Both the position numbers and the translations under genes were made by a program. From positions 132,246,001 through 132,310,000 of the forward strand of contig NC_043000.1 in NCBI RefSeq assembly GCF_006345805.1: DNA of 64,000 nt, written 5' to 3'. This document shows, one piece after another, positions 660 to 60,552 of this stretch. The notes under the pieces were generated by a model, which worked only from the letters and a program-made list of their open reading frames with translations, had not been told where the DNA came from and did not search any database. This DNA is from Octopus sinensis. Taxonomy: Eukaryota. The number at the start of each line of letters is the position of its first letter. The first letter of the stretch is position 1.

Positions 660-2055
660 GAAAACTCACAGCTTATTTTGCTGGGTATGATGGAAAGTGT
701 CAGCTGTCCACAGTCAGCAGACTTTGGTGACATTTGTTTACTGGTCATGCTTCAAAAACCCTGTGAAGAATTCTTGCAGTTCCAAGCAATGCTGATTTTT
801 GTAAGTGTTCTACTTTCACACTTGCACTTGGTAGTTGAGTGCTGATGCTTCCAAGTGCACCAATTACTATTGGTATCACATCTACTCTCTTCATTGATCA
901 CAACCTTCGTATATTCCACTTCAAATTGTTATAGTTGTTTACTTTTTCTTCTTCTGTCACCAGGGCATGCTATGTCGATTATCACACATGTTCTTTCTTT
1001 TTTATTCACCACAACAATGTCTGGTTTTTGACATCTGGTCACATTGAATAATTGCATCCCACAGGATTTTGCAATTCTCATTTTCAGTGACTCCTTCTGA
1101 AGTTTTCTCATACCATGTCTTTACTCTTTGTAGGCCGTGATTTCCACAGAGCTCCCAATGGATCATTCTTGCCACATTGTCATGGCATCTTTTGTAAGTG
1201 CGTTGTGCCAATTTCAGGCATTTGCTAATGATGTGCCATACCATTTCATCCCCCTCACAACACATTCTGCATTTGTTACTTTCTGTAGTGTTGTCTATTC
1301 TGCACTTCTGATCCTTAATGCTTGTTCTTGAGCTGTGCATATGAGTGCTTCTATCTCTATCTTCAGGTCACTCCTCCTCATCCATAGCCATCAGTCCTCT
1401 GCATTTGTCTTGGTGTTCACTCTGGAAAATTGACCATACATTTTTTTTCTCCCATGCTTTTTCTTTTTTTTTTTTGTTCATTTCTTGTTTAAATTTTCTT
1501 TTGTTGCATAATTTTCAGTTTTGATGACACTAGCCTTCTTCGTGTGTTTCAACAGCGGCTCCACTGCATTATTTTACATGCCACCCTAGGCTGTTTTCCT
1601 CTGCTTTGATACAGCCCTGGAAACTAATGAAACCTCTTCCAATCTTTCTTGTGGACAAGTACAACCTATTGGTGTCACTCTTTGGGTAGAAGGCTATGTG
1701 TACTGTCAACATTTTTCTGGTCTTGTTATCCATTTTCTTCCCTTCTCTCTTTTGCCATTTTATAATTCCTGCTCCATACTAAAGTGATGCTATCACCCAC
1801 ATATTAACTGCTTGGATTTTATTCTATCCTGTCAATTTTGAGTGCAACACCAACCTCAGTCTTTGGAAATGCTTCATCCTCAGTTGCTCTTTCATTTTCT
1901 TTTCCATTATCTCATTGAACTCTAGTACACCAAGGTATTTGTATCCTTCCGTTTCAATTTGTTTAATCATGTCTCTATTCGGTAATGCTATCCCTGCAAG
2001 GGACTGTACCTTGTCTCTATTTAGGTAGATTATTCCACACTTCTTGAGTCCAAAA
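660..2055 (-). mobile_element. Degenerate R4/Dong-clade LINE (RT end, zinc knuckle, restriction-like endonuclease)
   Basis: FGLKKCG...EGYKYLGVLE (about 1915-2055, RT domains 6-7); KCRMCCEGDEMVWHIISKC...HDNVARMIHWELC (CCHC knuckle); KPDIVVVNKKERTCVIIDIACPGD (PD..D RLE motif). Frameshifted. Confidence 0.85.
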
Positions 2056-9299: not shown

Positions 9300-9452
9300 A
9301 TGTCTTCTTCGGAGCCGTCGTTTCCGTCTGTAGCCGATAGCGGCGAAATGTACCATGTAAAACCATACCACTCTTTTAATAATATGAATCTGAAGACGTC
9401 TGAAGATATGTATTATGTTAAACGAATTACCAAAGCTCATGAAAAAGCCGAT
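9300..9452 (+). CDS. AIMP2: AIMP2 coding exon 1 (51 aa)
   Basis: MSSSEPSFPSVADSGEMYHVKPYH...EDMYYVKRI resembles the AIMP2 N-terminus (human MPMYQVKPYH...CMYRL). ATG at 9300 has A at -3. Phase-0 donor GAT|gtgagt at 9452/9453. Region is CpG-rich. Confidence 0.85.
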
Positions 9453-17582: not shown

Positions 17583-17975
17583 CTCTTTTTCTTTTATTTG
17601 TTTAAGTCATTTGACTGCAGCCATACTGGAGCACTGTCTTTAGTCAAACAAATCAATTCCAGGACCTATTCTTTGTAAGCCTAGTACTTATTCTATCGGT
17701 CGCTTTGACTGAACTGCTGAATTATGAGGACATAAACACACCGGCATCGGTTGTCAAGCAATGATGGGGTGACTCATGCATGCACAGACACACACACACC
17801 TATGTATATATATATATATGATGGGATTCTTTCAGTTTCCGTCTACCAAATCCACTCACAAGGCTTTGGTCAGCCCGAAGCTATAGTAGAAGACACTTGC
17901 CCAAGGTGCCATACAGTGGGACTGAACCTGGAACCATGTGGTTGGTAAGCAAGCTACTTACCCAACAGCCACTCA
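17583..17975 (-). mobile_element. SINE family B
   Basis: Reverse complement of the 12433-12810 family. Confidence 0.85.
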
Positions 17976-17984
17976 TATATATCA

Positions 17985-20286: not shown

Positions 20287-21552
20287 ATTTACTTGAGTAC
20301 AATGCAGTCTCAAATATAATGTGATACCAAGACAAAGTGACCATAATTATGTAAATTTTTCAGAGAAACTAACATGATATTTTGGTTTCAAATTTTGGCA
20401 CCAAGCCAGCAACTTTGTAGAAGTGGGTATTTCGATTACACTGACTCCAGCAGTCAACTGGTATTTATTTTATCAACCTCAAAGGATGAAAGATAAAGTT
20501 GACCATGGTGGAATTTGAACTCAGAACATAAAGCAAATGAACTGCAAAGCGTTTTTGCCTGGTGTGCTAAAGTTTCTGCCAGCTCACTATCTTAGCAATT
20601 TATATGATATTGCCAGGGTCTCTGGACTCGTGAGATCAGTATGGTGGATATTTAGTTTTAATGTAGGTTAAAATTTACATGAAAAAAATTTGGGCAGAGA
20701 GGAAATTCCAGTAGGATGGCCTTGTGAAGAAGAAGGATTGGGCAGAATAATTATTGTGGAGGCAGCGAAACCCAATAAAGATAAAGTGGGAAGGAGAAAC
20801 AAGTCTATTGTGTGCTGGTAGGTGATATACTAGAATTAGATAGTACAGAGAATCATATCAGAGACTGAGTAGCAATAAAATAAGTAGAAAGAGGTCACAT
20901 ATGTTGTAGTAAGGCTTGAATTTGTAACCGCCAAGTGTGTTTCATGTTTTTACCTCTCTCACTCACTCACGTGCATGTACACACACACACACACAAACTC
21001 ACACAAAATCATGCACACACAAACTCACCACACACAAACACACACTTACAAACTCACACACGCATACAAACTCACCTCCACATACACAAACTCATACACA
21101 ATTTAATAATGTATTTATTTTACTGACAGGTTGACAGTTTGAATTATGAAATCTTCAGGTTTGACTTTTAAAAAAAAAGTGTATATGTGTGTATCTTTAA
21201 ATTTATAGAAAGTTTTCCTTGTTCAAATACTTAACAAGAGTTGGTTCTAAATTATTGTTTCCTTCATATTTTGGAAAAGTAGAGATTCATTCAAACTATT
21301 AAACCTCTTCACTTTATCTCAAATATTCCCTCCAAAATGGTACGAACTATACTGAAAAATTAGTATAGCTAGAACTGGTTTCATAAGAATGAATAGATTG
21401 AATCAACCCAAGTGATGCCTTTATAAAGTTCTGCATTGCTGACTCACTGTTGTGTAAGTCTATTTTGGTTACACACCTCAACTCTTCTCTTTCAGTCTTT
21501 GAAAGTCAGTTATTTTTCTGTTGTCAGTGTTAGTTAGCTGCTGACTGCTACA

Positions 21553-22104
21553 ATGGGAAATACTGCTTCTAAAGCTGCAGAGCAGTTTCTTCACCGAGTT
21601 ATTGCATGTGGAGCTAAGAAGAAAAAATCACGAAAATCTGACATGTGCTCTGATAAAACTCCTTTAGAACAACCAACAACTATTAAAAATTCTTCAACTG
21701 CTGTTACCAAATCTTTTGTAGCTAATCAAGATAGAATGGAAAATATTGATGCTTGTGAAAACAATGGGAATATTGAGACAGCTTTAGTTGAGGACTATGT
21801 TTTAGTTTCATCCCGTAATCAACAGAAAGAAGATACAGCTATGTCTGTGGAGAATGTAACTGAGATGAAACCTTCATCAGATATGGATAAATATACCTGT
21901 GAAATTAAACCACAAAACTCTCCTACAAAACTACTTCATTCTATAGAAGATATTCCTCATTCAGACAGCACTTGTGTAAATCAAAAGTCCTGTAGTATTT
22001 CATCAGAAATATCTGCTTCCAAATCTAACCCATCTTTCACTCATGTCAGCCAAGATGCGACGAGTCATGTGGATTTATTAAAAAATGTTGATGAAAATAT
22101 TCAG
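21553..22104 (+). CDS. Putative alternative first (or cassette) coding exon of AIMP2, 184 aa, with N-myristoylation motif
   Basis: 552-nt stop-free frame in AT-rich intron, no recognisable TE motif. Kozak ACAATGG. Phase-0 donors CAG|gtaaaa (22104) and CAG|gtattc (22116) match the phase-0 exon 2 acceptor. Acceptor tcttctctttcag ends at 21495. Link to AIMP2 is inference. Confidence 0.6.
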
Positions 22105-22426
22105 GTAAAAGTACAGGTATTCTCAAATAACAATAACAGCAAAATAATTCTCTTTAATTTAATTGACATACATTTTATTACTAGTAACTATAATAGTGGC
22201 TGTTGTTACTATCTGGTTTGTATAACTGATTGAAGTGCATGCACCTTTATTTTTAAGTGGGTCATATATTATATGAGAATCACAAGGAAGAGAGCCTGTA
22301 CACCATGCTGCTTTTGTTAAACAGTTTTTTTATTCATATCCTTGAAATTCTCTTTGGTTATTGGTTTGTTACAACAATATAGGAATATTTAGTGGATGTT
22401 TTAAAAAGCGATTAATAATTACTTAA

Positions 22427-22620
22427 CCCTTTAGCATTTAAACTGACCATATCCAGCCAAAATATTCTACCTGTTTTATGTTCAAACTGACCAGATCCAG
22501 TCTCTCATATTTACAGTTTTATTCTAGAAATAAGCAATCATGTCATTGAAATCTCAAAGTTACAGGATAATGCATGACTGGTTCAAATAAATGCAAATAA
22601 CTAATCTGAATACTAAAGGG
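22427..22620. mobile_element. piggyBac-type MITE, 194 bp
   Basis: TTAA|CCCTTTAGCATT ... AATACTAAAGGG|TTAA; TTAA TSD and 12-bp TIR with 1 mismatch. Confidence 0.85.
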
Positions 22621-22878
22621 TTAAATATGTTTTTTAATATTGGCATAACATCTGAAATTTGGTGTGTTAGGGATGGGGGCAGGGTATTGGTTGATTACAT
22701 CAACTATGGTACTTATACTTTGTTTCATTGATCCTAGAGGGATGAAAGGTAAAATTGATCTCAGTGAGATTTGAACTCAGAATGTAAAGAGCTGTAACTG
22801 AATACTGCAAGGCTTTTTATTTAATGATTCTGCCTATCCACTATTCTTATATTTCTGTGTGTGTGTATGTATGTATGT

Positions 22879-22909
<31 letters not shown>

Positions 22910-24215
22910 TATATATATATATAATAAAATGTTCCATAGCTCATGGGGTGCCATTGAAACATTTGTTTACATGTATTGATTCATGCACAATACACTGGAG
23001 TAGTTTGTTGTTATCCTCTCCAAGCCCCTAAAAGGGTTTTGAGTTCAAAATTGGGAGCAAATGTAATAATTCTTAATTATGCAACAATGCTTTTGTTGCT
23101 TACAATAATAAACAGAGCTTGTTATTTATTCAGCTAAGAGGACCTAGTTTATTGAGAATTAAGTACATTTTCCAAGGACTCGACACTCTGCAGGTACAAT
23201 ATAAACTATCAACTTACCTGTATAACTTGTAGTCTATTAACTTAGCTGTCATTCTGCCTCTAAGTGTCAATAGATGAATAGAAGTGTTCAGTTGGTGTTG
23301 TTTAGTATTGACTCAGTGTGATAGGATAGATTTCTGATCAATACTGTTCCTCTTCCTAAGTATTTTTTTTTTTGCACACACCAGGATTACATTATCCTAT
23401 GGCTCCCTTTTTTTTTTAAAGTGTGTAGATGTGACTTAACTGTTTTTTTAGCAGATAAGTTTTCAATTAACATATATATAAAGGATTAAACTAGTTTGTG
23501 CTGATTTCTTGCTCCAATTCTATAATGGTCTGTTTCTTCAATTAATTTCTCGATAATTAACGACTTTGATGGGGAAATTAATTGTTTTTTTAATTTAATG
23601 AAACTTTTCTGTTTAAGACATTATTGTTCTTTTTTTTTTTTTTTGCTGAGTGATTTTATTTCCAACATTTCCTAATTATATTTCTTCTTTTAAAGAAACT
23701 GGTGACTATTTCAGTTCTTATTAATGTTCAGTAAGTTTCAGCTGACCATGTCAATAGTGCTGGTATTATCACAGTAGTGTTGTTGTCAATGGCTGGTACC
23801 TTATCACAGTAGTGTTGTTACCAAAACAAAGGCATTTGTTGTTTAGCTTCAGATCAGCCTGACTGAACAGGCATATGATTAGACATTCCAACTGCGACTA
23901 TCCCAGCTTGTTTTCAAGGAAGGACATTGTATCCAGTACTAAATTATCTATGTCCTTCCTTATTTCTCAAGATGGTTGAAATCTTATTTGGGTTAGATTT
24001 GGCTGCTATTCATAGCAGACCCAGCAACCACATGAAGCTACTTTGTTACTTTATCTTGGTATAGACTATGTAGCTTTAATAATGAATCATAGCGGGGTAC
24101 AATATGCCATTGAAAATTTTAGGGAACATTGTAAAATTGGTGACTTTTATTAGCTTACATAGCATAGTTAAAGTTCTCCTTTTGCCTTGATTCCATCACT
24201 GTGAAGTATATTTAC

Positions 24216-24443
24216 CACTTAAATGTGGCTAACCCCTAAGGGTGGATGCTATTGTAGCTTGTAACCCCAGGAGGACACCTCCTCCAGCTGGCTATTGATA
24301 CACTTTCTGTGCCCTATCAGTATTTGCAAAGGGAAGCCATCCTTCCCGTCTTCAACCTATGTCAATAGCCAGCTGGAGGAGGTGTCCTCCTGGGGCTACA
24401 AGCAACAGTAGCATCACCCTTAGGGGTTAGCCACATTTAAGTG
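24216..24443. mobile_element. Foldback MITE with ~83-bp TIRs
   Basis: cacttaaatgtggctaacccctaagggtg...cagctggctattga is mirrored by tcaatagccagctgg...ggggttagccacatttaagtg. Confidence 0.85.
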
Positions 24444-26264
24444 ACATACTTACTTCACAATGTATTGCAGCTACTGTTTATATCTTGTTCAGAGATTTAT
24501 AATTCCATCACCATCAGACCAAAATAAAGCAAACAATTTAAACAAACTCAGTACAGCTTTTTTTTTTTATATAACTTAAGTCTATGTAGACAGTATCATG
24601 ATATTGCAGGGTCCCCATGGCTAGTAAGGAAAATGGAAGATAAAACTGTAGTCTCATATGCAAAAAACCCAAAGCTATGTGATTGTAAAATTCTTAATCA
24701 CAGTCATTCAGCATTCCACATTCCAGCAAGTCATTCTCCATTCTGGTTTGAGGAATATCTTGATTTCATACCACTGTCATTTTAATGGTTGACTGGGTAA
24801 GATGTGATTTGGTGATCCTTATGAAACCTAAAACTTGCCAGCTTTAAAGTACAAGGAAACTTGGCACCAATTCTCTTTCATGCCTACGGAAAAATATTGT
24901 GTCATATATTATGAGTGATCTGTTTTAATACCGAGTACTCTCATTTGATGAACTGGATTCTCTTTCCTGTCATAAATGACAGATGAGGGTTTTGCAATGT
25001 CTTGCTGAACAACTTGCACAAATGCTTTGTTTATAGTGATCAAATGTTTGTGCCATACATGACCTCACTCTCCATCAACTCGACATTGTCAGTACACGGT
25101 GTATCATGCTAACTGTTGAGGTTATTACAGAGCAACATGAAATGGGATGCTTTATTTTTTTTTTTTTTTTACTGAGTGATTATATTTTATTGTCATTTTT
25201 CTGCTTGCTTTTTCTTACAAGCGAGAGTCTATTTACTGTTGAGAACATTTCTTGCTGGTTGGCTTTGAGAACAATTCTTGCCTTAGGCAGTAGGTGTTAA
25301 AACACCAACAGTCATTTCATGGTTACCCTCTATGCTGAATGCATTTCTAGCTTCTTGGCTATCATCCCTATGTACCACAAGAGGAACAACCTTCAAATAA
25401 CTCTGGAAGCTTTTACTTCCTTATACTAAATCAGTTTCAAAACACAAACTTATTATATCATTATCATCAACATTTAACATCCATTGTCCATGCATTGGAC
25501 AGTTTGACTAGGGCTGGGAAGCCGAGGGGGCTGTGCCTGAAACCAGTCTGATTTGGCATGTTTTCTAATGCCCTTCCTAATGCCAACCACTCCGAGAGTT
25601 TAATGGGTGCTTTTATATGCCACCGGTATGGGTACCAGTTGCGTGACACCAGTATCTGACATGACTACGATTTCATTGCCTCCGTGAGGCCCAATGCTTG
25701 AAAGGTGCTTTTTATGTACCACCATCACAGATGCTGCTTACATAATACCAGCATCAGCTGCATTGTCTCCATGAGGCCCAACGCTTGATAGGTGGTTTTT
25801 ACATGCCACCAGCACAGGTGCCACATACATGACACCAACATCAACCACAACAATGATTTCATTTGGTTCGACAGGTCTTCTCAAGCATGGCATATCACCA
25901 AAAGTCTCAGTCACTAATCATTGCCTCTGTGAGACCCAGTGTTTGTAGATCAAGCTTCACCACTTCTTCCCATGTTGCATTGTTGCCTTTATTGAACTCA
26001 TAAAGCAAAATATGCCAAATATGCTCCTTTGTCACTTCCATTATAGCTTTGAAAAAATAATGGTTAAAATCGAACTACACTCTTCAAAACTTGCACTTAG
26101 AATAAGGACATGGTAAAATTACTACCTGCTTTTATAGCGAGTTGATGCAGGTAGTTTATCCCATTCCCCTTCCAACTTTTAGTTCATGCAATTGAAAAAA
26201 ATCACATTAGTTATGGGATGACCCAACACACACACACATGCATATATATATACAAGGCAGCAAG

Positions 26265-26464
26265 CTGGCAGAAATGTTGCCGTATTTCGTCTGCCGTTAT
26301 GTTCTGAGTTCAAATTCTGCCGAGGTTGACTTTGCCTTTCATCCTTTCGGGGTCGATTAAATAAGTACCAGTTACGCACTGGGGTCGATATAATCGACTT
26401 AATCCGTTTGTCTGTCCTTGTTTGTCCTCTCTGTGTTTAGCCCTTTGTGGGTAATAAAGAAATA

Positions 26465-26465
<1 letters not shown>
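26265..26465 (+). mobile_element. SINE family A, young-tail subfamily, in AIMP2 intron 1
   Basis: Tail ttaatccgtttgtctgtcc...gtaataaagaaata followed by (AT)n; several CpG>TpG/CpA changes. Confidence 0.85.
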
Positions 26466-26499
<34 letters not shown>

Positions 26500-28117
26500 C
26501 AGAGACAGAGTAAACAAGAATAAACTATTGTATATTTCAGGGCATCACTACACACATGTTTCAGTAGCATGTTTATTCTAATTATGAGTATTTGCATAAC
26601 AGGTAACACTATATATATATATATATATATAGTCATGTAAAAAGTATCCAGTCCAGTGTGTAAAATGGTTGTCATCAGAAAGTGCATCCAGCTGTAAAAA
26701 CCATGCCAAAGCAGTTGGCGTAGCTTGGTGCTGTCCCCTGGTTTACCAGATCCTGTCAAACCAACCCATGCCAACATGGAAGACTGACATTAAATGATGT
26801 AAATGATGAGTACCTGTGTATGTACACACAGACACACAAACATGATGTTTGTTGTTGTGGCACTGTAGTTAGAGTATTGAACTTTTGACCAAAGTTCACT
26901 GGTTCCAACTATAAGATTCTCTTGAAATTGTTTATTTTATTTGTAATCTTTCATTCATTAAATATGTTAATACTATGGCACAGGCACAGCTGTGTGGTTA
27001 AGAAGTTTTCTTTGAAACTTAATGGTTTTCAGGTTCAGTCCCATTGCATGGCACCTTGGGTAAGCGTCTTCAATTATAGCCTCAGGTTGACCAATACTTT
27101 GTGAGTGAATTTGGTAGATGGAAACTGCAGAAAACCTATGGCTGTTTAGTGAAGAAATTTGCTTCCCAAACCATTCAGTTTGGGGTTCTGTCTTACTTCA
27201 GGGAATTTTGGACAAGAGTCTTCTACCATAGCTTTTGGCCAACTGAAGCCTTGTGAGTGGATTTAATTAACAGAATTGAAAGAAAATTGCTTTGTGTGTG
27301 TGTGTGTGTATGTGTGCGTTATAGTTGTAAATGTGCATCACCATCATATAAGTACTGTCACACACTTCCAATCTTCTGTGAAAACAAGTCCAGCTACGGT
27401 TAAATACTGCTTTGTTTAGAAGAGTATGAAGTTTGCAACAGGATGGGTATCCTCCATAAAAAAATCTACCTCAGCAAATTTATTCTGATTCTGCAAGTAT
27501 GGAAAAGTGGGCATTAAAATGATGTACATGTATATAAATGTTGATGAATGTTGATATTCCACACTTGTCCCTACTTGAGCAAAATGGTGGTGATAGTACT
27601 GAGATGGACCAGCTGTATTAAGTACAGCTGACTGAGGTAAATAGCACAGATAATAGTTTATTTAGTTTTGTTATCCTGGAATGTTTAGTTTGTGGTAGAT
27701 TGCTGCTAGTCTGTCCAGGTAAAGAGATGTTTTTCACTTATTGAAAGAAAAGTATTAAAGATAATCTCTAGCAAATTGTGGTGGATAAAAAGGGAAAATA
27801 AAATGAAAATGTTTGTGATCAAGAAGGGCGTTAGCTTTTGTTGAATGGTTTCATATGTGTGGTAGCAGGATTCGGCTATTTGCCACAACTCCAATAAAAG
27901 TCAGAAGTGGTTGTTGCAGAATTTCTACAACTTCACCAGCTTTAGGATACAGTTGAGAAAGACACAGATCACTCTGCCTGCAACATCCCCTGTGTGTGTG
28001 TGTATGCACACATTCAAACATATACATGTATATCCTTGTGATGTTTTCTCTAAGAATGCAAAACTGACCTAAGATTTTTGTGTAAAAACAACAGTAAAAT
28101 TCGCTTAACCCTCTTAA

Positions 28118-28338
28118 CCCTTTCATTACTGTATTTATTTTGAGATGCTCTGTGTTTCTTTCAATTATTTTAAATATAACAAAGAATTTAGTAAATTAAC
28201 TTCGTTATCATTACGCTAGTGTTAGGAACACAAATTTTAACTAAGATTTGGAGGAAGATTTGAATTCAAAACTTATGAAAACAAGATATTTATACTAAAG
28301 AGCCAGAGCCGGTTTCAGCTGGGTTGGTAATGAAAGGG
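28118..28338 (+). mobile_element. piggyBac-type MITE, 221 bp (copy 1)
   Basis: TTAA|CCCTTTCATTAC ... GTAATGAAAGGG|TTAA. Confidence 0.9.
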
Positions 28339-29578
28339 TTAATATCAATCTGCCTGAGACTACTTCTGGTTCTATAATACAAATTCTCAGGTTCAAAGTA
28401 ATCTAAATTAAAAAAATTCCTTCAAAATGTAATGTCAATTTATGTTCCTGACATCAGATTGAGAAACACAAAATTATTTTACTAAATTTTTCATTATTTT
28501 TCAAATTGATTTGAAACAGGGGCAGTGTATAAGTGCATGGAGACACTATGTTGTAATGGAAGTTCATAAGTTTAATCTTTACCCCATTTTAAAAGGTGCT
28601 ATGGATTAGAAAGCATGCTCGATAAACTGTCAGTATCCCAGTTTTTATTATCTGTTAAAGCTAATTTTATTTCATTTATATCACAAATGATCTCATTATT
28701 TATGGCTTTTCATACCCATATTCCCCCCTCCCCTGTAAAATATTAGGGGCTTATGGTTACTTGGTGCAGGCAAAGGGAAACTACTCCAGTTTACTTGTTC
28801 TAATGTGTTTCTAAAAATTTCATTTACTTATGAGACTCAAAGTGAGATCAGTCTTGCAAACTATTATCATGGAATTAGTTGCAGTTGAGTAATATATCTG
28901 CTTGGTTGTTAATACCTTTGTGGGATGAATTTAATATGGAATTTACCATTACCGTTTCTCAACACTCATCACCTACAACCCTTAATCAGGACTTCAATAT
29001 CGATAATGGAGAAGAAATACTTAAAGCTAAGAAAATATGTGTTAATTTTTGTAGTATTCTCCTATATAGTGAGGAAGTTACTATCATGTTTATTTGCAGC
29101 TTGGTTGAATGAAAAGTCATAAGTATTAAGTGGTGGACAGATTATAGCACAATATGAGGGAGCCTCTACGTAGTATTCAACCTACCAGAAAGAGGAGTCA
29201 AATCTTCAAATACATTCTATTGGCTTTAAAAAAAAAAAAAGAAGAAAACAGTGGTTATGGTTATGGAAATACTGTCAGGTATAAAGATGGTCATATTTGG
29301 AATGCTTTTGATCATAGATATGGTTGATCGGTTAATCATGTTGGACCTGGGGCTATAAACTACACAAATTACAAGAATGTGATCAACATTCTGGATGGCA
29401 ATTGTACACTTTTTGTCCAGTTTTTGTGATATTACTCTGAAATATTGAAGTGTAAGAATTAATACAAAAGGAATTGTTTATTTTAGTTATCTTTTATCTT
29501 GATTCTGGACTTAACTTTCAGATGCTTTCTTAGTTTTGATTTATTTCTGTTATATTTTCTTTCCTTTTCAACATGAAG

Positions 29579-29722
29579 ACACTGAATAACCCAATTTCTG
29601 ATCTTGAGAGGCAACAAGCTGCTATCTTTGCTCGACTCAAAAGAATACAAGATGAATTAGATAAAATGTCATGTGGAAGTGAATGCCAGGAGAGCAGTCA
29701 GACATTGGGCCCTGTTCTAGAT
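29579..29722 (+). CDS. AIMP2: AIMP2 coding exon 2 (48 aa, coiled-coil/leucine zipper)
   Basis: ISDLERQQAAIFARLKRIQDELDKMS parallels human [26 protein letters not shown]. Pyrimidine tract then gaag|ACA acceptor; donor GAT|gtaagt; phase 0-0. Confidence 0.9.
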
Positions 29723-30599
29723 GTAAGTACAGTTTCAATTTGGCTCTTTGATGTCTCTTTTCTATATAAAAAAAAAAGCTACAAAACATTGTCATGGATA
29801 CTATTTGTGTGAAATGTTAGAACTAAGTTTTGCAATGGTATTCTTTGTTTAATGATTAATCTTTGAAATGAGTTGACTGAGGAAAATAAAATTATCTCAT
29901 TCTGGAGATGGTTTCTGTGTTAACAGACATGGCTGTGTGGTTGAGAAGTTTATTTTTCAGCCATGTTTTAGGTTCAGTCCTGCTGTAGAGCACCTTTAAA
30001 AGCCTTGTAACTGGTTTTGGTAGACAGAAACAGAGAGAAAACTGTTGTGTGTGTGCATGCATGTGTTTAGATATGAAGTTATTTGTGCCAAATTGTAGTT
30101 TGTGGTGTGTGGTGTTGTCAGTTTCTCCTGTCAGCAAATTGTCTGGGCACTTCATGCCTTTGAAACTGTAGAATAAGTGATCTCTAAAACTATTTAGGGT
30201 TAGTGTCAGGAAGGGCATTGAGCTGTAAAGCATTGCATCCATCACATTACATTTTCATTTAACTCATGCTTGCAAGGAAAAACTGGACATAAAAAGAATG
30301 AAGTAGTAGAGCATTGATCTTTAACCATACACCAATCACTTATCTTTCTCTTCTCTCTTTATATATGGATATGAGAAAAAGGAAACAGAAAAAAATTGAT
30401 GCCTTATCAACATATGACCTCTGTTTCTGTGAAAGAAAACATGCAATGATAACTTCATGTAAGGGTTTTTCTGATCATTGTCATCATCATTGCTCTTTGG
30501 TCTGCTTTTTCTCTGTTGGCTTGTGTTGGATGACACCTCTTCAAGTAGTATTCTAGGGATGGATATCTTTCTTGGTGTTAACATTTACTTTCTTTTCAA

Positions 30600-31130
30600 G
30601 TAAGATTCTTTATTCCACATCTTTGTATGTTGAACTATCAAGCTGCCAGACATGTTGATTATGCAGGAAATGAATGTCACTGTTGCCCAAGCCGGGTTGA
30701 TGCAAAGATGCATGGAAACACACACACCTCATCATGACCATCATCATCATGCTGGTGGCACATAAAAAGCACCATTTGAGCGTGATCGTTACCAGCGTCG
30801 CCTTACTGGCACTTGTGCTGGTGGCACATGAACAAAACATTTGAGCGAGTTCGTTGCCAGTGCCGATGGACTGACTCCTGTGCCGGTGGCACGTATAAAA
30901 CACCATTTCGAGTGTGGCCGTTGCCAATACCACCAGACTGGCCCTCGTGCCAGTGGCACGTAAAAGCACCCACTACACTTTTGGAGTGGTTGGCGTTAGG
31001 AAGGGCATCCAGCTGTAGAAACTCTACCAGATCAGATTGGTGCCTGGCACAGCCATCTGGTTCACCAGTCTTCAGTCAAATCGTCCAACCCATGCTAGCA
31101 TGAAAAGCGGACGTTAAATGATGATGATCA
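30600..31130 (+). mobile_element. Family D retroposon with tandem subrepeats
   Basis: Repeated gtgc(c/t)ggtggcac(a/g)t units, then the conserved 3' end aaagcggacgttaaatgatgatgat. Confidence 0.8.
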
Positions 31131-31407
31131 TTCTTATAATGCCCATTTTTTTTCATACTTTCATGGGTCAGATGAAAATCGTTGAAATAGATTTTCTGTG
31201 GCCACATGCTGTTCCTGTCACCAACCTTCACTTGTTTCCAAGCAGGGTAATATTTTCCTATGGCTGAAAATGCCTCACGTTTTATTTTTCATTTGAATTA
31301 TGGTTACAAACGGATAACCTAATAACTACAGAATAATAAACTAAATAATGATCTGTGATTTCTTTTTCTTGTATTTATATAATTTTAATTTTTATTTTAT
31401 TCTACAG

Positions 31408-31651
31408 AATGTTAAATTTCAAGATTTAGTGATTGGTGTTGACCCGAATTCAGTCCCGTTGTCTGTACTTATTCTATATCAAGAACTCTCACGAAGTTTG
31501 AAAGTGAAGCCTACTGTATATGTTCATTCTTCTGTTGAGAAGAAACCTTCACCAAAATTACGTAATTTATTTGACTTTGCCTCACCTTTGAAGAAACCGG
31601 AAGACAGTCGGCTGTCAAACGATCTGCTGCTCACAATTATTTACAAAAATG
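31408..31651 (+). CDS. AIMP2: AIMP2 coding exon 3 (thioredoxin-like N part of GST-like domain)
   Basis: FQDLVIGVDPNSVPLSVLIL...VYVHSSV...LLTIIYKN matches AIMP2 (DIVINANPASPPLSLLVL...HTHSSV...LIWKN). Acceptor tctacag|AAT; donor G|gtaaaa; phase 0-1. Confidence 0.93.
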
Positions 31652-31689
31652 GTAAAAGAACCATTATAACTACTTTTCTATTTGTCTTT

Positions 31690-32070
31690 TGTCTTTTACA
31701 TGTTTCAGTCATTTGACTGTCTTGAAGGGTTTTTGAAGAACAAATTGATCCTGGTACATATTTATGAATTTGGTACTTATTCTATTGGTGTCTTCTGCCA
31801 AACTGCTAAGTTACAGGGAGATATACAAATCAACACTGGTTGTCAAGTAGTGTTGTTGGACAAATACAAAGACATGCATACACACACACACACACACAAA
31901 CACACATGCATACATATATATACATGGTGGGCTTCCACACAGTTTCCATCTAGCAAGTTCACTCACAAGGCATTTTTGGGCTTGGGGCTAACCCATGGTG
32001 CTGTGCAGTGGAACTGAACCTGAAATCGTGTGATTGCAAAGTGAGCTCAACCACGCAGCCATGCCTGCAC
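31690..32070 (-). mobile_element. SINE family B, decayed
   Basis: Reverse-strand match to family B. Confidence 0.7.
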
Positions 32071-32357
32071 TATTTATTTGCCTTTTTTTAAAAAACTGTT
32101 TCCTATAAATCTTTCTTTGTTTTATTGGTAGGGTGGTGGTTGTAATTTAAAGTTTGCAGCTTCAAGGATTTGACTGAATGTCTTTTACTACCACTTATAG
32201 CATTAGAACTTGCTGTCACTTTTGTGAACTGAAAGAATTAGAATTATTTACCTGTGGGTACAATATAATAGGGTGCTGGGATGGGTAGTTTCTGTGTGGT
32301 TGCTTAGCTTGTTAGAAATAACAAAATCTCCTTTGAATCATATCCTACTCTTATTAA

Positions 32358-32577
32358 CCCTTTCGTTACCAACCCGGCTAAAACCGGCTCTGGCTCTGAG
32401 TACAAATGTCTTGTTTTCATAAGTTTTGAATTAAAATCTTCCACCAAATCTTAGTCACAATTTATGTTCCTAAAATTAGCTGAATGATAACTAAGTTATG
32501 TTACTGAATTCTTTGTTATATTTAAAGTAATTGAAAGGAACATAGAATATATCAAAATAGATACAGTAATGAAAGGG
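32358..32577 (-). mobile_element. piggyBac-type MITE, 220 bp (copy 2, inverted relative to copy 1)
   Basis: TTAA|CCCTTTCGTTAC ... GTAATGAAAGGG|TTAA; the body is the reverse complement of 28118-28338. Confidence 0.9.
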
Positions 32578-33381
32578 TTAAAGAAAATAAGGACACATTA
32601 AATTAAATAGTCCTAGATATACTAAAACAAAGAGATAATGAGGGATGATCATGTCTGGAATGCCTTTGAACGTAGGTTCTGGAGATTAAACCTGTGACTG
32701 ACACAAAAGTGCCTTTATGTAGTTGTTACTTGTTAGAAATAGCAGGTATATTGCTCATATCATATACTACATTGGACATTAGCTTCTGATATACAAAAAT
32801 CCCATAAGCTACTTTTTATTTCTAACCACCTTGAATTTATGATTACATATTAAAGAGCTCATCTGTAATATCTACATTCATAATCTTCTGTTCTAATACA
32901 GTAAAAAAAATGCTACCATGTGAATGTTGAAGATTTAAGCTGATTCACCCGAAATTATCATACCATGTTTAGATGGATTGCTTTTGCCAAGTACTCAGAA
33001 AATTTTGGCTTGTTTGATGTTGAAGAAAACTTTACTAGTTGGTGTGTTGTGCATAACTTCTGCCAAATAAGTGTTTACTTCTCAATTAGATTAGTACTTA
33101 CCATCAAGTCAATCAAGATAATCAGAACAGATCATGATAAACACTGGATAAATCGTGGATATTGAACTGGCGGAAGACTAAAAATAATATAAATAGAAAA
33201 CGAGAGATCAGCTTTACGGGGGTTAACTGGCTATTTATTAATGGTTATTTTTTAATATTTGCTTCTCAAACATTGTAAAATTCGGGTTTCTTTTCATTCA
33301 CATTGTCAAATAGTCATTTTCATTGAAAATCAAATTATTATTTAATTTGTAATTTCATTTTCTATTAATTTTTACTTTCAG

Positions 33382-33782
33382 TTCGTCAAGGATGTTCGCT
33401 GATGGTCAATCCTGAGAAACAAACCTTTATCTATGGAGAAGTGAATGTTGCTCGATATTTTTCTAGATTGATAAACCCCTCATATGATAAAGATCCTGTT
33501 CAGTCAACGCTGATAGATGCTTGGGTAGATAAAGCCAGTTTATTACTTTATAATGGTAATGCTGAACAAAAAAATGAAATGATAAAAGATCTAGACTCAA
33601 CACTGTCAAAGAGAAAGTGGTTGGTTGGTCATGACTTGTCTTTAGCTGATATTGTTTCTTGGTCTGGTATCCAGAAAAACAAGCTTGCTAAACTTGTTTC
33701 ACCAAATGTTGAAGTTTGGATGAAAACTTGTGCAAGTCATCCCATGTTCAGTTTTGTTAATAAAGTATTATCACAACTCTGA
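33382..33782 (+). CDS. AIMP2: AIMP2 coding exon 4 (GST C-terminal-like domain, stop)
   Basis: IYGEVNVARYFSRL...IDAWVD...LDSTLSKRKWLVGHDLSLADIVSWS matches AIMP2 IEGEGNIARFL...IDSWVD...WLAGNELTVADVVLWS. Acceptor tttactttcag|TT completes phase-1 Val; TGA at 33780-33782. Confidence 0.95.
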
Positions 33783-39089: not shown

Positions 39090-39475
39090 GGCGGGGGCGG
39101 GCGAAAGGTGTAGCCGTATTTCGTCTGCCGCTACGTTCTGAGTTCAAATTCTGCCGAGGTCAACTTTGCCTTCCATCCTTTCGGGGTCGATTAAATAAGT
39201 ACCAGTTACGCATTGGGGTCGATATAATCGACTTAATCCGTTTGTCTGTCCTTGCTTGTCCCCTCTGTGTGTAGCCCCTTGTGGGTAGTAAAGAAATAGG
39301 TATTTCATGTCTTTACGTTTTGAGTTCCAATTCTGCAGAGGTCGACTTTGCCTTTCATGCTTTCGAGGTCGATAAATTAAGTACCAGTTGCGTACTGGGT
39401 CGATCTAATCGACTGGCCTCCTCCCCCAAAATTTCGGGCCTTGTGGCTAGCGTAGAAAAGAATTATATCAGATTT
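39090..39475 (+). mobile_element. SINE family A nest: young copy followed by remainder of an old copy
   Basis: Young tail aaagaaata is joined directly to ggtatttc + body + old tail cccccaaaatttcgggccttgtg. Confidence 0.8.
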
Positions 39476-40437: not shown

Positions 40438-41072
40438 AGGCGGCGAGCAGGCAGAAACGTTAGCACACCGGGCGAATGCGTAGCCGTATTTCGTCTGCTG
40501 CTACGTTCTGAGTTCAAATTCCGCTGAGGTCGACTTTGCCTTTCATCCTTTCAGGGTCGATTAAATAAGTACCAGTTACGCACTGGGGTCGATATAATCG
40601 ACTTAATCCGTTTGTCTGTCCTTGTTTGTCCCCTCTGTGTTTAGCCCCTTGTGGGTAGTAAAGAAATAGGTATTTCGACTGTCTTAAGGCAGCGAGCTGG
40701 CAGAATCGTTAGCACGCCGGGTGAAATGCCTAGCGGTAGTTCGTCTGCCGCTACGTTCTGAGTTCAAATTCCGCACAGGTCGACTTTGCCTTTCATCCTT
40801 TCGGGGCCGATTAAATAAGTACCAGTTACGCACTGGGGTCGATATAATCGACTTAATCCGTTTGTCCCCTCTGTGTTTAGCCCCTTGTGGGCAGTAAAGA
40901 AATAGGTATTTCGTGTGTCTTTACGTTCGGAGTTAAAATTCAGTCGACGTCGACTTTGCCTTTCGTTCTTTCGGGGTCGATAAATTAGGTACAAGTTGTG
41001 TACTGAGTCGGTCTAATCGACTGACCCCCTTCCCCCAAATTTCAGGCCTTGTGCCTAGAGTAGAAAATAATT
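40438..41072 (+). mobile_element. SINE family A triple nest
   Basis: Two young copies and one old remainder; ~17-bp near-duplication ggtatttcg..gtctt at 40669-40685 and 40905-40921. Confidence 0.85.
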
Positions 41073-42577: not shown

Positions 42578-42778
42578 CTCTTTTACTTGTTTCAGTCATT
42601 TGACTGCGGCCATGCTGGAGCACCGCCTTTAGTCGAGCAAATCGACCCCGGGACTTAATCTTTGTAAGCCTAGTACTTATTCTATCAGTCTCTTTTGCCG
42701 AACCGCTAAGTGACGGGGACGTAAACACACCAGCACCGGTTGTCAAGCAATGCTAGGGGGACAAACACAGACACACAA

Positions 42779-42811
<33 letters not shown>

Positions 42812-42986
42812 CATATATACGACAGGCTTCTTTCAGTTTCCGTCTACCAAATCCACTCACAAGGCATTGGTCGGCCCGGGGCTATAGCAGAAGACACTTG
42901 CCCAAGATGCCACGCAGTGGGACTGAACCCGGAACCATGTGGTTGTTTAGCAAACTACTTACCACACAGCCACTCCTGCGCCTATA
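42578..42986 (-). mobile_element. SINE family B, near consensus
   Basis: Full-length reverse copy with CpGs intact. Confidence 0.9.
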
Positions 42987-47640: not shown

Positions 47641-47856
47641 GGCGGCGAGCTGGCAGAAACGTTAACACGCCGGGCGAAGTGCTTAGCGTTACGTTGTGAG
47701 TTCAAATTCCGCCGAGGTCGACTTTGCCTTTCATCCTTTCGGGGTCGATAAACTAAGTAGCAGTTTCACACTGGGGTCGATGTAATCGACTTAATCCGTT
47801 TGTCTGTCCTTGTTTGTCCACTCTATGTTTGGCTCCTTGTGGGTAGTAAAGAAATA
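47641..47856 (+). mobile_element. Young family A SINE with TSD
   Basis: GGTATAGAGA duplicated at 47631-47640 and 47857-47866; internal deletion of about 20 bp. Confidence 0.9.
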
Positions 47857-48600
47857 GGTATAGAGAGGCATGCTGTCCGTGTTTTCGGTATCAATAGACG
47901 TTAATTTCTCTAATGCTCCTCTAAACTAAGTTTTTGCTTGTCCTTGTCCACCTACTTAGAACATCTTGTTTCTCTTTCATCATTCCATTTGTGTATCACT
48001 TTGCTGATCTCATACTAAACATTTTACTTAATCATCCTCAATTAGAGATGCAGCCTTCTATAATTCCTTTCGCAACCAGGTTGTATTTTCTTGCAGATGC
48101 AGACACTGAAAAATAGATGTCCACTGGCTTAGTAAGGCCTACAAAGGTCATCTTTCAAGTATGTTTTTAAAAAAATGGTATTTTATAAAGCTGTCGTAAC
48201 ATGTTTGCTTGGTTATGAAACATATGCCTTATCTAGTGCAATACCAAGACCAATTACAAATCAACTAATAGCATAATAAGATTAAAATATAAGTATTAAA
48301 ATGCATAAATATGTAAATGGAACAATGTTTCTTCCAAGTTGGTGCATGTTTTGCAATCAGCAATGCACAAAATAAATTAAAAGGCGCACTGGAAATTAAT
48401 GCTAAACTAAGAAGTTAATTGCCTAAAATAATTTAGTAATTAATAATATTTTATCAGTTATTATTTATATTACTTATACATTAGCGCGCACATATTTCTG
48501 CCAGATAAGCAAAAATCTGTACTCCATAAGATTTTTTGTGCACATTGACTACTAAAAAGTTAGAGAAACATCAGGAACTACATATATTTAGTCACATTTG

Positions 48601-49429: not shown

Positions 49430-49640
49430 GGTGAGTTGGCAGAAACGTTAGCACGCCGGGGGAAATGCGTTGCTGTATTTCGTCTGCCGTTACGTTCTGA
49501 GTTCAAATTCCGCCGAGGTCGACTTTGCCTTTCATCCTTTCGGGGTCGATAAATTAAGTACCAGTTACGCACTGGGGTCGATGTAATCGTCTTAATCCGG
49601 TTGTCTGTCCTTGTTTGCCCCCTCTGTGGGTAGTAAAGAA

Positions 49641-49642
<2 letters not shown>
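49430..49642 (+). mobile_element. Young family A SINE in (AT)n
   Basis: Head, body and young tail, flanked by (AT)n on both sides. Confidence 0.85.
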
Positions 49643-49677
<35 letters not shown>

Positions 49678-59625: not shown

Positions 59626-59867
59626 CATGTCTAGATATGCAACTATATGCATGAGAATACAAATATAAAACATACAAATCTGCACATACATATATACATC
59701 CATCCATCCATCCATCCATACATACTTACATATATATATATACTTACAAACAAAAGTACCGTGTTGTTGGTGCTGAAATTCCAATGAAGGAGCCTTGGAT
59801 CTAGGTTAGGAACCGGTTCTCTATTGGCAAGAAATCTCGAAATAAAATGAATAATGGCATACATACA

Positions 59868-59991
59868 TACATACATACATACATACATACATACATACAC
59901 GCATACATACATACACGTATACATGCATACATATATACATGTATGCTTGCATACATACATACATACATACATACATACATGTATGCTTGCA

Positions 59992-60027
<36 letters not shown>

Positions 60028-60247: not shown

Positions 60248-60287
<40 letters not shown>

Positions 60288-60514: not shown

Positions 60515-60552
<38 letters not shown>

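What the first reader, a model, noticed from the sequence alone, without database searches (positions are those of the whole stretch)
21553..22104. Hidden in-frame exon could give AIMP2 a myristoylated, membrane-targeting N-terminus
Seen: a 184-codon open frame in the 20-kb AT-rich intron 1, with a strong Kozak ATG and phase-0 GT donors that fit exon 2 (predicted 446-aa isoform versus 313 aa). It begins MGNTASK, then a short helix, Cys19 and KKKKSRK (22-28), followed by a long S/T/N/E-rich, probably disordered linker. Established: G2-x-x-x-S6-K7 is the N-myristoyltransferase consensus, and myristate plus Cys palmitate or a polybasic patch is the two-signal membrane anchor. AIMP2 is the cytosolic scaffold of the multi-synthetase complex; I know of no lipidated isoform. 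Inference: an alternative N-terminus tethers AIMP2, and perhaps tRNA charging, to membranes, possibly relevant to local translation in cephalopod neurons.
Basis: partly seen in the sequence, partly recalled or inferred. Interest (0 to 1): 0.82.

Follow-up and report, generated by a model that had tools for sequence, protein, structure and literature searches.

The report
Lipid-anchor-type alternative start of AIMP2
The open frame is a real, already annotated alternative first exon of octopus AIMP2, conserved across cephalopods and probably a snail. It replaces the lysyl-tRNA-synthetase-binding end of this scaffold with a conserved predicted fatty-acid and positive-charge membrane anchor that nobody has tested.

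Summary
Window 21553-22104 is a 184-codon, phase-0 exon in AIMP2 intron 1, and it contains the longest open frame in the window.

It is not hidden. The window is Octopus sinensis, and the predicted 446-aa protein is letter for letter RefSeq XP_029635515.1. O. vulgaris carries both the 313-aa and the 447-aa forms.

The exon sits at the same place in O. vulgaris, O. bimaculoides, another octopus, Argonauta and a cuttlefish. In Sepia esculenta, RNA-seq assemblies join it exactly to exon 2 in 11 contigs, against 11 for the two 309-aa canonical forms. The 5'UTR is contiguous with the exon, so it is an alternative first exon with its own start site. A second decapodiform and the gastropod Hua wujiangensis express the same architecture.

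M1-G2-N3-T4-x-[S/G]6-K7, Cys19 and a basic cluster are conserved across coleoids. The roughly 150-190-residue linker evolves fast and is predicted disordered.

The isoform loses both MYxVK motifs of exon 1 that align with the N-terminus of vertebrate AIMP2. It keeps the leucine zipper and the thioredoxin-like/GST fold.

Myristoylation, membrane binding and any effect on tRNA charging remain predictions. I found no paper describing a lipidated AIMP2. Donor 22116 is not frame-conserved.

The parts
9300..9452 (+). Canonical AIMP2 first coding exon (51 codons, phase 0). It encodes the two MYxVK motifs (MYHVKPYH and MYYVK) that align with the N-terminus of vertebrate AIMP2. It is mutually exclusive with the alternative first exon.
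   Evidence: Translation and GTGAGT donor. 100% identical to O. vulgaris exon 1 and conserved in O. bimaculoides and Argonauta, with a weaker partial match in the cuttlefish. Motifs align with vertebrate AIMP2 N-termini.
21392..21552 (+). Conserved core promoter and 5' leader of the alternative exon. TATAAA lies at 21422-21427. The start site is inferred near 21445-21465.
   Evidence: Identity between O. sinensis and Argonauta is 77% over -175..-1 and 86% over -60..-1. It is about 42% further upstream, and the BLAST block starts at 21392. The TATAAAG is identical in all octopods. Cuttlefish and other decapodiform transcript 5' ends lie 115-125 nt upstream of the ATG and are contiguous with the genome.
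21553..22104 (+). Alternative first coding exon of AIMP2 (184 codons, phase 0).
   Evidence: ORF. Identical to residues 1-184 of XP_029635515.1. Syntenic ORFs occur in five other cephalopod genomes. Indels are 3, 51 and 3 nt only. dN/dS is 0.45-0.74.
21553..21636 (+). Codons 1-28: the predicted N-myristoylation site (G2..S6-K7), a predicted helix, Cys19 and the basic cluster K22-K28.
   Evidence: M1 G2 N3 T4 K7 C19 K24 are invariant in 8 coleoid sequences. All match PROSITE PS00008 at the N-terminus, with net charge +5 to +7 over residues 1-32. dN/dS of the first 30 codons is 0.2-0.3. AF2 predicts a helix over residues 2-27 at low confidence.
21637..22104 (+). Codons 29-184: fast-evolving S/T/N/D/E/K-rich linker, predicted disordered.
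   Evidence: pLDDT is 26-32 with no secondary structure over residues 28-188. Disorder-promoting residues make up 65%. dN/dS is 0.5-0.8. Whole-exon length ranges from 169 to 219 aa between species.
22105..22110 (+). Splice donor GTAAAA following the invariant last codon CAG.
   Evidence: CAG|GTAAA is present in all six genomes. Q184 is invariant. A 1-nt indel immediately downstream in L001 rules out 22116 as a conserved in-frame donor.
29579..29722 (+). AIMP2 exon 2 (48 codons, leucine-zipper helix), the common acceptor for both first exons.
   Evidence: The junction ..DENIQ|TLNNPISD.. is in XP_029635515.1. The same boundary is used in cuttlefish transcripts. AF2 predicts a helix over residues 189-215 with pLDDT 84-86.
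31408..31651 (+). AIMP2 exon 3 (thioredoxin-like part of the GST fold).
   Evidence: Pfam PF18569 matches at E = 1.8e-23.
33382..33782 (+). AIMP2 exon 4 (GST C-terminal part, including the stop codon).
   Evidence: Pfam PF00043 matches. Matches human AIMP2 in PDB entries 5A34 and 6IY6 at E about 1e-28.

Best explanation
The region 21553-22104 is an alternative first exon of AIMP2. It is transcribed from its own TATA-type promoter inside intron 1 and spliced from 22104 to exon 2 at 29579. The product is a 446-aa isoform, already modelled as XP_029635515.1.

In this isoform the 51 residues of canonical exon 1 are replaced. Those residues carry the two MYxVK motifs which, by alignment with vertebrate AIMP2, correspond to the LysRS-binding segment. 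The replacement has three parts:
- (a) MGNTASK, a substrate-type sequence for methionine aminopeptidase and N-myristoyltransferase.
- (b) A short amphipathic helix ending in the invariant Cys19, followed by the basic cluster KKKKSRK.
- (c) A disordered tether of about 155 residues.

The leucine zipper and the thioredoxin-like/GST domain are unchanged. In human AIMP2 these hold AIMP1, EPRS and AspRS.

The most likely mechanism is co-translational myristoylation of Gly2, strengthened by electrostatic binding of the basic cluster to acidic lipids and possibly by palmitoylation of Cys19. This would hold a fraction of AIMP2 on a cytoplasmic membrane face at the end of a long flexible tether, as a scaffold that cannot bind LysRS.

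Shown here: the exon, its splicing, its own transcription start in cuttlefish, its age (coleoids, probably molluscs), the selective conservation of the N-terminal motif, the disorder of the linker, and the loss of exon 1.

Inferred: lipid attachment, membrane localisation, which membrane, and what the tethered protein does.

My rough confidence by step: real expressed AIMP2 isoform 0.95; N-myristoylated 0.7; membrane-associated 0.6; recruits other synthetase-complex members to membranes 0.3.
For: Identity and annotation:
- Window 11553-43782 is 100% identical to O. sinensis CM016862.1.
- The AIMP2 cluster holds XP_029635515.1 (446 aa), whose sequence equals the 22104->29579 splice of the window, and O. 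vulgaris CAI9720823.1 (447 aa) alongside the 313-aa form CAI9720822.1.
- The coding range of the O. sinensis model corresponds to window 21553-33782.
- In the O. vulgaris annotation, alternative forms were added by PASA updates from Iso-Seq and RNA-seq (PMC10700109).

Transcripts:
- The 475-aa long form occurs on 11 Logan contigs, including SRR23936170 and SRR25097168, which are Sepia esculenta larval RNA-seq. The two 309-aa canonical forms in the same cluster sit on 9 and 2 contigs.
- These contigs map on the A. pharaonis genome as four blocks: alternative exon with contiguous 5'UTR, then exons 2, 3 and 4.
- A 451-aa form occurs in four runs of a second decapodiform.
- A 466-aa form starting MGSVLSRC..C19 comes from Hua wujiangensis RNA-seq.

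Conservation:
- Syntenic intact ORFs lie in AIMP2 intron 1 of O. vulgaris, O. bimaculoides, an unnamed octopus, Argonauta (39% aa identity, full length) and the cuttlefish.
- M1 G2 N3 T4 K7 C19 K24 and the last codon are invariant.
- All N-termini match PS00008.
- dN/dS is 0.2-0.3 for the first 30 codons, 0.5-0.8 for the linker and 0.09-0.22 for exons 2-4.
- Indels inside the exon are all multiples of three, and the CAG|GTAAA donor is conserved.
- The promoter and leader block is conserved between Octopus and Argonauta.

Structure and domains:
- AF2 predicts helix 2-27, a disordered 28-188, a zipper helix 189-215 and a confident GST fold.
- The retained domains are confirmed by Pfam and PDB matches.
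- Exon-1 motifs align with vertebrate AIMP2, and the long forms lack them.
Against: - No lipidation or localisation data exist, and I found no paper on a lipidated AIMP2.
- I could not inspect octopus RNA-seq junction reads. For Octopus itself the splice rests on two gene models.
- O. bimaculoides, Argonauta and A. pharaonis annotations list only the short form.
- PS00008 is a permissive pattern. By my own rough estimate about one in five sequences starting MG would match.
- Position 6 is Gly in decapodiforms, which is allowed but less favourable than Ser.
- The basic cluster starts 20 residues from Gly2, further than in Src or MARCKS. KKKKSRK also reads as a classical nuclear localisation signal.
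- The gastropod N-terminus has almost no net positive charge (+1).
- The linker is only weakly constrained.
- The profile search found no relatives outside cephalopods, and no Pfam family matches the exon.
Confidence: 0.7

Rival explanations
1. The isoform is real and translated, but its N-terminus is not a membrane anchor. The basic cluster would act as a nuclear localisation signal or a protein or nucleic-acid binding patch. Any myristate would serve as an intramolecular or protein-protein switch, as in c-Abl 1b. The isoform would then act as a LysRS-free, possibly nuclear or decoy form of AIMP2, functionally closer to the human DX2 variant.
For: KKKKSRK fits the classical monopartite NLS pattern (sequence). 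AIMP2 has nuclear partners in vertebrates (my own knowledge). The basic cluster is 20 residues from Gly2. The gastropod form lacks the basic cluster but keeps G2 and C19, so charge-based membrane binding is not universal. Loss of exon 1 alone could be the functional point.
Against: An NLS alone does not explain the invariance of G2-N3-T4 and [S/G]6-K7 at the extreme N-terminus across coleoids. It also does not explain the MG start with S6 in the gastropod. The combination of myristoylation consensus, nearby Cys and basic cluster is the textbook arrangement for membrane binding.
Confidence: 0.2
2. The exon is transcriptional or annotation noise. An intronic start site would give a spliced RNA whose ORF is not translated to any useful level, and the open frame would persist by chance or through constraint on the DNA or RNA.
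For: The linker dN/dS is 0.5-0.8. Three annotations omit the isoform. No proteomic evidence was seen.
Against: Intact ORFs of 169-219 codons persist from octopus to cuttlefish, although the protein sequences are only about 20% identical. The only detected cuttlefish match, from protein query to translated DNA, covers the first 25 residues. Indels are only multiples of three. The N-terminal motif is under purifying selection. The last codon, donor and phase are conserved. The long form is assembled about as often as the canonical forms in Sepia RNA-seq. 0 of 200 simulations give an ORF this long.
Confidence: 0.03
3. The exon is the first exon of a separate gene nested in AIMP2 intron 1. It would splice to other exons, and the AIMP2 fusion models would be artefacts.
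For: Phase-0 compatibility with exon 2 has a one-in-three chance expectation. There is an acceptor-like AG at 21495 in Octopus species.
Against: Assembled transcripts from three species join it directly to AIMP2 exons 2-4, with the stop at the AIMP2 terminus. No other gene is called within 10 kb of the O. sinensis coding range. In Argonauta versus O. sinensis, the conserved non-repeat blocks between the alternative exon and exon 4 are only that exon and AIMP2 exons 2-4. The AG at 21495 is not conserved in Argonauta.
Confidence: 0.02

Closest known systems
c-Abl (ABL1) isoforms 1a and 1b
   Same: Two mutually exclusive first exons with separate promoters are spliced to a common exon 2. Only one of them starts MG and is N-myristoylated, so promoter choice decides lipidation (my own knowledge). 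The AIMP2 locus has the same gene logic.
   Different: In c-Abl the myristate mainly docks into the kinase domain as an autoinhibitory latch rather than anchoring the protein. AIMP2 is a non-enzymatic scaffold, and its N-terminus adds a basic cluster, a Cys and a tether of about 155 residues.
NADH-cytochrome b5 reductase (CYB5R3) and methionine sulfoxide reductase A (MsrA) isoforms
   Same: Alternative first exons give a myristoylated form and a form with a different location from one gene. This is my own knowledge. One search listed an Msr review (PMC6316033) containing the search terms, but I did not read it.
   Different: These are enzymes, and lipidation relocates a catalytic activity. In AIMP2 the exchange also deletes a partner-binding segment, so both composition and location would change.
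Src / MARCKS-type myristoyl-electrostatic anchors and myristoyl-palmitoyl dual anchors
   Same: An N-terminal Gly2 consensus is followed by a lysine/arginine cluster (net +5 to +7 over residues 1-32) and a conserved Cys.
   Different: The basic cluster begins at residue 22 and the Cys is at 19, both further from Gly2 than in Src (basic residues 5-16) or in Gα/Src-family MGC motifs. The gastropod version lacks the net charge. Nothing has been tested biochemically.
Human AIMP2-DX2 splice variant
   Same: It is an AIMP2 isoform with an altered N-terminal region that keeps the GST domain and changes partner binding (my own knowledge).
   Different: DX2 skips exon 2, the zipper, and keeps exon 1. 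The molluscan long form does the opposite: it keeps exon 2, replaces exon 1 and adds about 184 new residues.
Canonical AIMP2 (p38/JTV-1) of the multi-synthetase complex
   Same: Exons 2-4 are shared. The thioredoxin-like and GST_C domains and the zipper helix are retained.
   Different: The long form lacks the two MYxVK motifs and has a predicted lipid anchor. I found no lipidated form in the literature.

Membership tests
AIMP2 (p38) scaffold of the multi-synthetase complex | Thioredoxin-like and GST C-terminal domain homologous to human AIMP2 | tested here: met
   PF18569 at E = 1.8e-23 and PF00043 at E = 3e-05 on the 446-aa form. Human AIMP2 chains 5A34_B and 6IY6_C match at E about 1e-28. 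AF2 pLDDT is 80-97 over residues 237-445.
AIMP2 (p38) scaffold of the multi-synthetase complex | Leucine-zipper helix upstream of the GST fold (L..LE.RQ..I..RL) | tested here: met
   Encoded by exon 2 and shared by both isoforms. L and E..Q columns are invariant from octopus to vertebrates. AF2 predicts helix 189-215 with pLDDT 84-86.
AIMP2 (p38) scaffold of the multi-synthetase complex | N-terminal LysRS-binding motifs (MYxVKPYH and a second MYxh motif) | tested here: not met
   The motifs are present in the 313-aa form (exon 1, 9300-9452) and absent from the long form in octopus, cuttlefish, the second decapodiform and Hua. Pfam PF16780 itself does not score on the molluscan exon 1. The assignment therefore rests on alignment with vertebrate sequences and on my own knowledge of the human complex.
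AIMP2 (p38) scaffold of the multi-synthetase complex | Physical assembly with EPRS, AspRS, AIMP1 and LysRS | not testable with these tools
   Needs co-purification of each isoform.
N-myristoyltransferase substrates | Gly at position 2 after an initiator Met, with a sequence matching G-{EDRKHPFYW}-x(2)-[STAGCN]-{P} | tested here: met
   All eight N-termini match, including Hua. The pattern is permissive, so this is necessary but not sufficient.
N-myristoyltransferase substrates | Evolutionary retention of Gly2 and the position-6/7 residues in orthologues | tested here: met
   M1 G2 N3 T4 K7 are invariant and position 6 is S or G in 8 coleoid sequences, while the rest of the exon is about 20% identical. 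Hua keeps G2, S6 and R7.
N-myristoyltransferase substrates | Covalent myristate on Gly2 | not testable with these tools
   Needs metabolic labelling or mass spectrometry.
Two-signal membrane anchors (myristate plus basic cluster or palmitate) | Second signal close to the myristoylated Gly: a cluster of Lys/Arg and/or an acylatable Cys | tested here: inconclusive
   Cys19 is invariant, including in Hua. Net charge is +5 to +7 over residues 1-32 in cephalopods but +1 in Hua. The signals lie 17-26 residues from Gly2, further than in classical cases.
Two-signal membrane anchors (myristate plus basic cluster or palmitate) | Membrane localisation dependent on Gly2 and the second signal | not testable with these tools
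   Needs localisation of wild-type, G2A, C19S and charge-neutralised fusions.
Alternative-first-exon lipidation switches (c-Abl 1a/1b type) | Two mutually exclusive first exons joined to the same second exon, only one encoding the MG start | tested here: met
   Both isoforms share the exon-2 boundary in octopus models, in Sepia and in the second decapodiform. Transcripts map as alternative exon-2-3-4 without exon 1.
Alternative-first-exon lipidation switches (c-Abl 1a/1b type) | Independent promoter for the lipidated form | tested here: inconclusive
   The transcript 5'UTRs (115-125 nt) are contiguous with the genome, and one contig runs into sequencing adapter. A TATAAA lies about 130 nt upstream of the ATG within a block conserved between Octopus and Argonauta. 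No CAGE or 5'RACE data were available.

The most novel reading that the evidence does not exclude
Molluscs have kept, for several hundred million years (my own dating; the Hua link is not proven homologous), a promoter-selected, lipid-anchored form of the multi-synthetase scaffold AIMP2 that cannot bind LysRS. It would assemble a partial synthetase sub-complex (EPRS, AspRS, AIMP1-linked enzymes) on a membrane at the end of a long flexible tether. That would give spatially restricted aminoacylation or signalling, for instance at synapses or secretory membranes.
Probability: 0.15. Interest if true: 0.8.

Novelty: new variant of a known kind. Interest (0 to 1): 0.5.

Why it matters
AIMP2 is described as a soluble cytosolic scaffold, and I found no lipidated form in the searchable literature. 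The locus encodes a second, evolutionarily old isoform in which promoter choice removes the segment that aligns with the LysRS-binding end and adds a conserved predicted lipid anchor.

That makes a concrete question testable: is part of the multi-synthetase machinery, or a non-canonical AIMP2 function, held at membranes in molluscs? Simple mutants (G2A, C19S, charge-neutralised) would answer it.

It also exposes annotation gaps. O. sinensis has no canonical 313-aa protein in the AIMP2 cluster I read. O. bimaculoides, Argonauta and Acanthosepion lack the long form although the exon is intact in their genomes.

The claim is limited, because the sequence is already public and the functional part is a prediction.

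Tried and rejected
1. The first protein search with the 184 aa returned only one genomic ORF from a related octopus. This looked like absence from annotation but was an artefact of 90% clustering: the 446-aa and 447-aa proteins sit in a cluster represented by the 313-aa form.
2. Separate nested gene: rejected.
3. Cassette or poison exon fed from exon 1: an in-frame TAG lies 24 nt upstream of the ATG, transcripts carry no exon-1 sequence, and the acceptor-like AG at 21495 is not conserved in Argonauta.
4. Second donor 22116: rejected because of a 1-nt indel in L001.
5. Repeat or transposon origin: there is no overlap with the window's repeat families, and the exon has a single syntenic copy in each locus.
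6. Pfam on the exon and on exon 1 gave nothing significant. PF16780 does not score on molluscan exon 1.
7. A profile search of 1.84 billion representatives with the exon alignment found only two cephalopod ORFs. This search cannot see long isoforms that are hidden behind canonical representatives.
9. A look-up of P0002 found no gene, because only the longest product per gene is on record.
10. tRNA and Rfam scans of the window were empty.
11. Literature searches for a myristoylated AIMP2, or for a lipidated multi-synthetase complex, gave only coincidental co-occurrences or nothing.
12. Accession-number searches identified only two of the six runs queried. The species of SRR11869385 (L001) and SRR276660xx (P0026) remain unknown.

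Full report
**1. The observation**

An ATG at 21553, in the context acaATGG, opens a 226-codon ORF that begins MGNTASKAAEQFLHRVIACGAKKKKSRKS. An in-frame TAG lies 24 nt upstream.

The first 184 codons end at 22104 with CAG|GTAAAA in phase 0. I rebuilt the AIMP2 gene in the window as follows:
- exon 1: 9300-9452
- exon 2: 29579-29722
- exon 3: 31408-31651
- exon 4: 33382-33782

All junctions are phase 0. The canonical product is 313 aa, and the exon joined to exon 2 gives 446 aa.

The ORF is the longest stop-free stretch in all six frames. None of 200 Markov simulations of the window reached 226 codons. It overlaps none of the window's interspersed repeat families.

**2. It is already a public gene model**

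The first protein search with the 184 residues returned one unnamed genomic ORF from a related octopus. That was misleading. Listing the 90% cluster of the canonical AIMP2 showed two longer members:
- XP_029635515.1, Octopus sinensis AIMP2, 446 aa
- CAI9720823.1, O. vulgaris, 447 aa

Both begin MGNTASK and read ..DENIQ|TLNNPISD.. across the predicted junction.

Window 11553-43782 is 100% identical to O. sinensis chromosome CM016862.1. The coding range of that model corresponds to window 21553-33782. In the cluster I read, the long form is the only O. sinensis protein, and the 313-aa form is missing for that species. O. vulgaris has both forms. Its annotation added alternative forms through PASA updates from Iso-Seq and RNA-seq (PMC10700109). 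So the exon is not hidden.

**3. Conservation**

tblastn of the exon against the AIMP2 loci of other cephalopods finds it on the same strand between exons 1 and 2:

| Species or locus | Amino-acid identity to the window exon |
|---|---|
| O. vulgaris | 97% |
| O. bimaculoides | 83% |
| Unnamed octopus (L001) | 76% |
| Argonauta hians | 39%, full length, 169 codons |
| Acanthosepion pharaonis (cuttlefish) | Only the first 25 residues score, but the ORF runs 223 codons (216 to the donor) |

Against L001, the three indels inside the exon are 3, 51 and 3 nt. The first indel after the donor is 1 nt. This argues for 22104 and against 22116 as the conserved donor. CAG|GTAAA is present in all six genomes.

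In an alignment of eight coleoid sequences, the invariant positions are M1 G2 N3 T4 K7 C19 K24, a few scattered residues and the last codon. Overall identity between octopods and decapodiforms is about 20%.

dN/dS values are as follows:
- first 30 codons: 0.2-0.3
- rest of the exon: 0.5-0.8
- exons 2-4: 0.09-0.22

So the N-terminal motif is the constrained part. The remainder behaves like a length-variable disordered spacer whose reading frame is maintained.

**4. Transcripts**

The cuttlefish AIMP2 cluster contains a 475-aa protein seen on 11 Logan contigs of 1.6-2.1 kb. The two 309-aa canonical forms in the same cluster sit on 9 and 2 contigs.

Two of the runs carrying the long form, SRR23936170 and SRR25097168, are Sepia esculenta larval RNA-seq (PMC10571815). 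The contigs map onto the A. pharaonis genome as four blocks: the alternative exon, then exons 2, 3 and 4. Up to 115 nt of 5'UTR is contiguous with the alternative exon, and there is no exon-1 sequence.

A second decapodiform, whose species I could not identify, gives a 451-aa form in four runs. One of those contigs runs into adapter about 124 nt upstream of the ATG.

The exon is therefore an alternative first exon with its own start site. It is used about as often as the canonical one in these whole-animal libraries.

In octopods a TATAAA at window 21422-21427 sits in a block of about 160 nt. That block is 77-86% identical between O. sinensis and Argonauta, whereas sequence further upstream is at random level, about 42%.

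**5. Beyond cephalopods**

A profile of the canonical cephalopod proteins retrieved a 466-aa protein from a 1.7-kb contig of SRR32833658. That run is RNA-seq of the freshwater gastropod Hua wujiangensis (PMC12222893).

The protein starts MGSVLSRCTQEVSSVLRNCLSK and continues with about 200 low-complexity residues. It then joins the AIMP2 zipper and GST fold at the same point as the cephalopod long forms, and it lacks the exon-1 motifs. It keeps G2, S6, R7 and Cys19 but not the net positive charge.

I read this as probable homology, which would make the isoform older than cephalopods. Convergence is not excluded, because I had no gastropod genome locus.

A profile search with the exon alone found only cephalopod ORFs. 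That search cannot see long isoforms clustered behind canonical representatives, and the word-indexed searches found no other invertebrate AIMP2 at all. The wider distribution is therefore unknown.

**6. What the isoform is made of**

Pfam and PDB comparisons confirm that the thioredoxin-like/GST fold of AIMP2 is retained. No family matches the new exon.

AlphaFold2 on a 26-sequence alignment gives these regions:
- residues 2-27: a low-confidence helix
- residues 28-188: no structure, pLDDT 26-32
- residues 189-215: a confident zipper helix
- residues 237-445: a confident GST fold

The canonical exon 1 carries MYHVKPYH and MYYVK. These align with the two motifs at the N-terminus of vertebrate AIMP2, and the long forms lack both. 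In human AIMP2 this segment binds LysRS, the zipper binds AIMP1, and the GST domain binds EPRS and AspRS. That is my own knowledge; only shows that PDB entries pair AIMP2 with EPRS chains.

**7. Mechanism**

All eight N-termini satisfy the PROSITE N-myristoylation pattern at the true N-terminus. Cephalopod versions carry +5 to +7 net charge in the first 32 residues and an invariant Cys19.

The best reading is a promoter-selected switch of the c-Abl 1a/1b or CYB5R3 type. One first exon gives the soluble scaffold with the presumed LysRS-binding motifs. The other gives a myristoylated form held on a membrane by myristate plus basic residues, possibly plus palmitate on Cys19. A tether of about 155 residues then leads to the unchanged zipper and GST domains.

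Lipidation, membrane binding and the consequences for the synthetase complex are inferences. The main rival is that the basic cluster is a nuclear signal or interaction patch, and that the point of the isoform is simply the loss of LysRS binding.

**8. Verdict**

The exon, the splice and the motif are right. "Hidden" is wrong. The second donor is unsupported. The isoform is probably not cephalopod-specific. The loss of exon 1 changes what "tethering tRNA charging" could mean.
- I found no report of a lipidated AIMP2. The functional idea therefore appears new, although the sequence is public.
- I rate it a new variant of a known kind, of moderate interest.

Noticed in passing
window 9300-9452: The canonical AIMP2 exon 1 is intact in this O. 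sinensis sequence and its translation is 100% identical to that of O. vulgaris exon 1. Yet the AIMP2 cluster I read holds no 313-aa O. sinensis protein, only the 446-aa form. Conversely, O. bimaculoides, Argonauta hians and Acanthosepion pharaonis annotations list only the short form, although the alternative exon is intact in their genomes (L003 22603-23205, L004 16879-17385, L005 32705-33352).
   Followed up: partly
window 21392-21552: A sharply bounded non-coding block upstream of the ATG, containing TATAAAG and two CTGACT motifs, is 77-86% identical between O. sinensis and Argonauta. Flanking intron sequence is at about 42%. The last 60 nt of the leader are more conserved than most of the coding exon, which suggests regulatory constraint on the promoter or 5'UTR.
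   Followed up: partly
window 22105-22265: The first 160 nt or so of the intron after the donor are 91-93% identical between O. sinensis and the L001 octopus, against roughly 70-83% further downstream. This may be an intronic splicing element. It is not conserved in Argonauta.
   Followed up: no
window 26271-26472, 39105-39306, 40475-40676, 47663-47864, 49464-49665, 50239-50625, 55164-55549: Ten copies of an interspersed repeat of about 200 nt (71-95% identical), plus several other families of 150-230 nt (for example 17590-17984, 42579-42985, 62562-63005). One of these families also matches Argonauta sequence (L004 6877-6985). They are probably SINE-like elements shared by octopods. No tRNA or Rfam match was found.
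   Followed up: partly
window 20935-21134, 59643-60701 and elsewhere: Long CA/TG-type microsatellite stretches create spurious ORFs rich in His-Thr or Cys-Val-Tyr repeats. These account for most of the other long ORFs in the window.
   Followed up: no
window 1002-1340 (- strand): A 112-aa ORF rich in Cys and His (..CRMCCEGDEMVWHIISKC..) looks like the zinc-binding tail of a retrotransposon polyprotein. Pfam gave no significant match.
   Followed up: partly
L021 (Hua wujiangensis transcript) 161-1561: A gastropod AIMP2 long isoform of 466 aa starts MGSVLSRC, has Cys8 and Cys19, and has no basic cluster. If it is homologous, the second membrane signal differs between gastropods and cephalopods.
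   Followed up: partly
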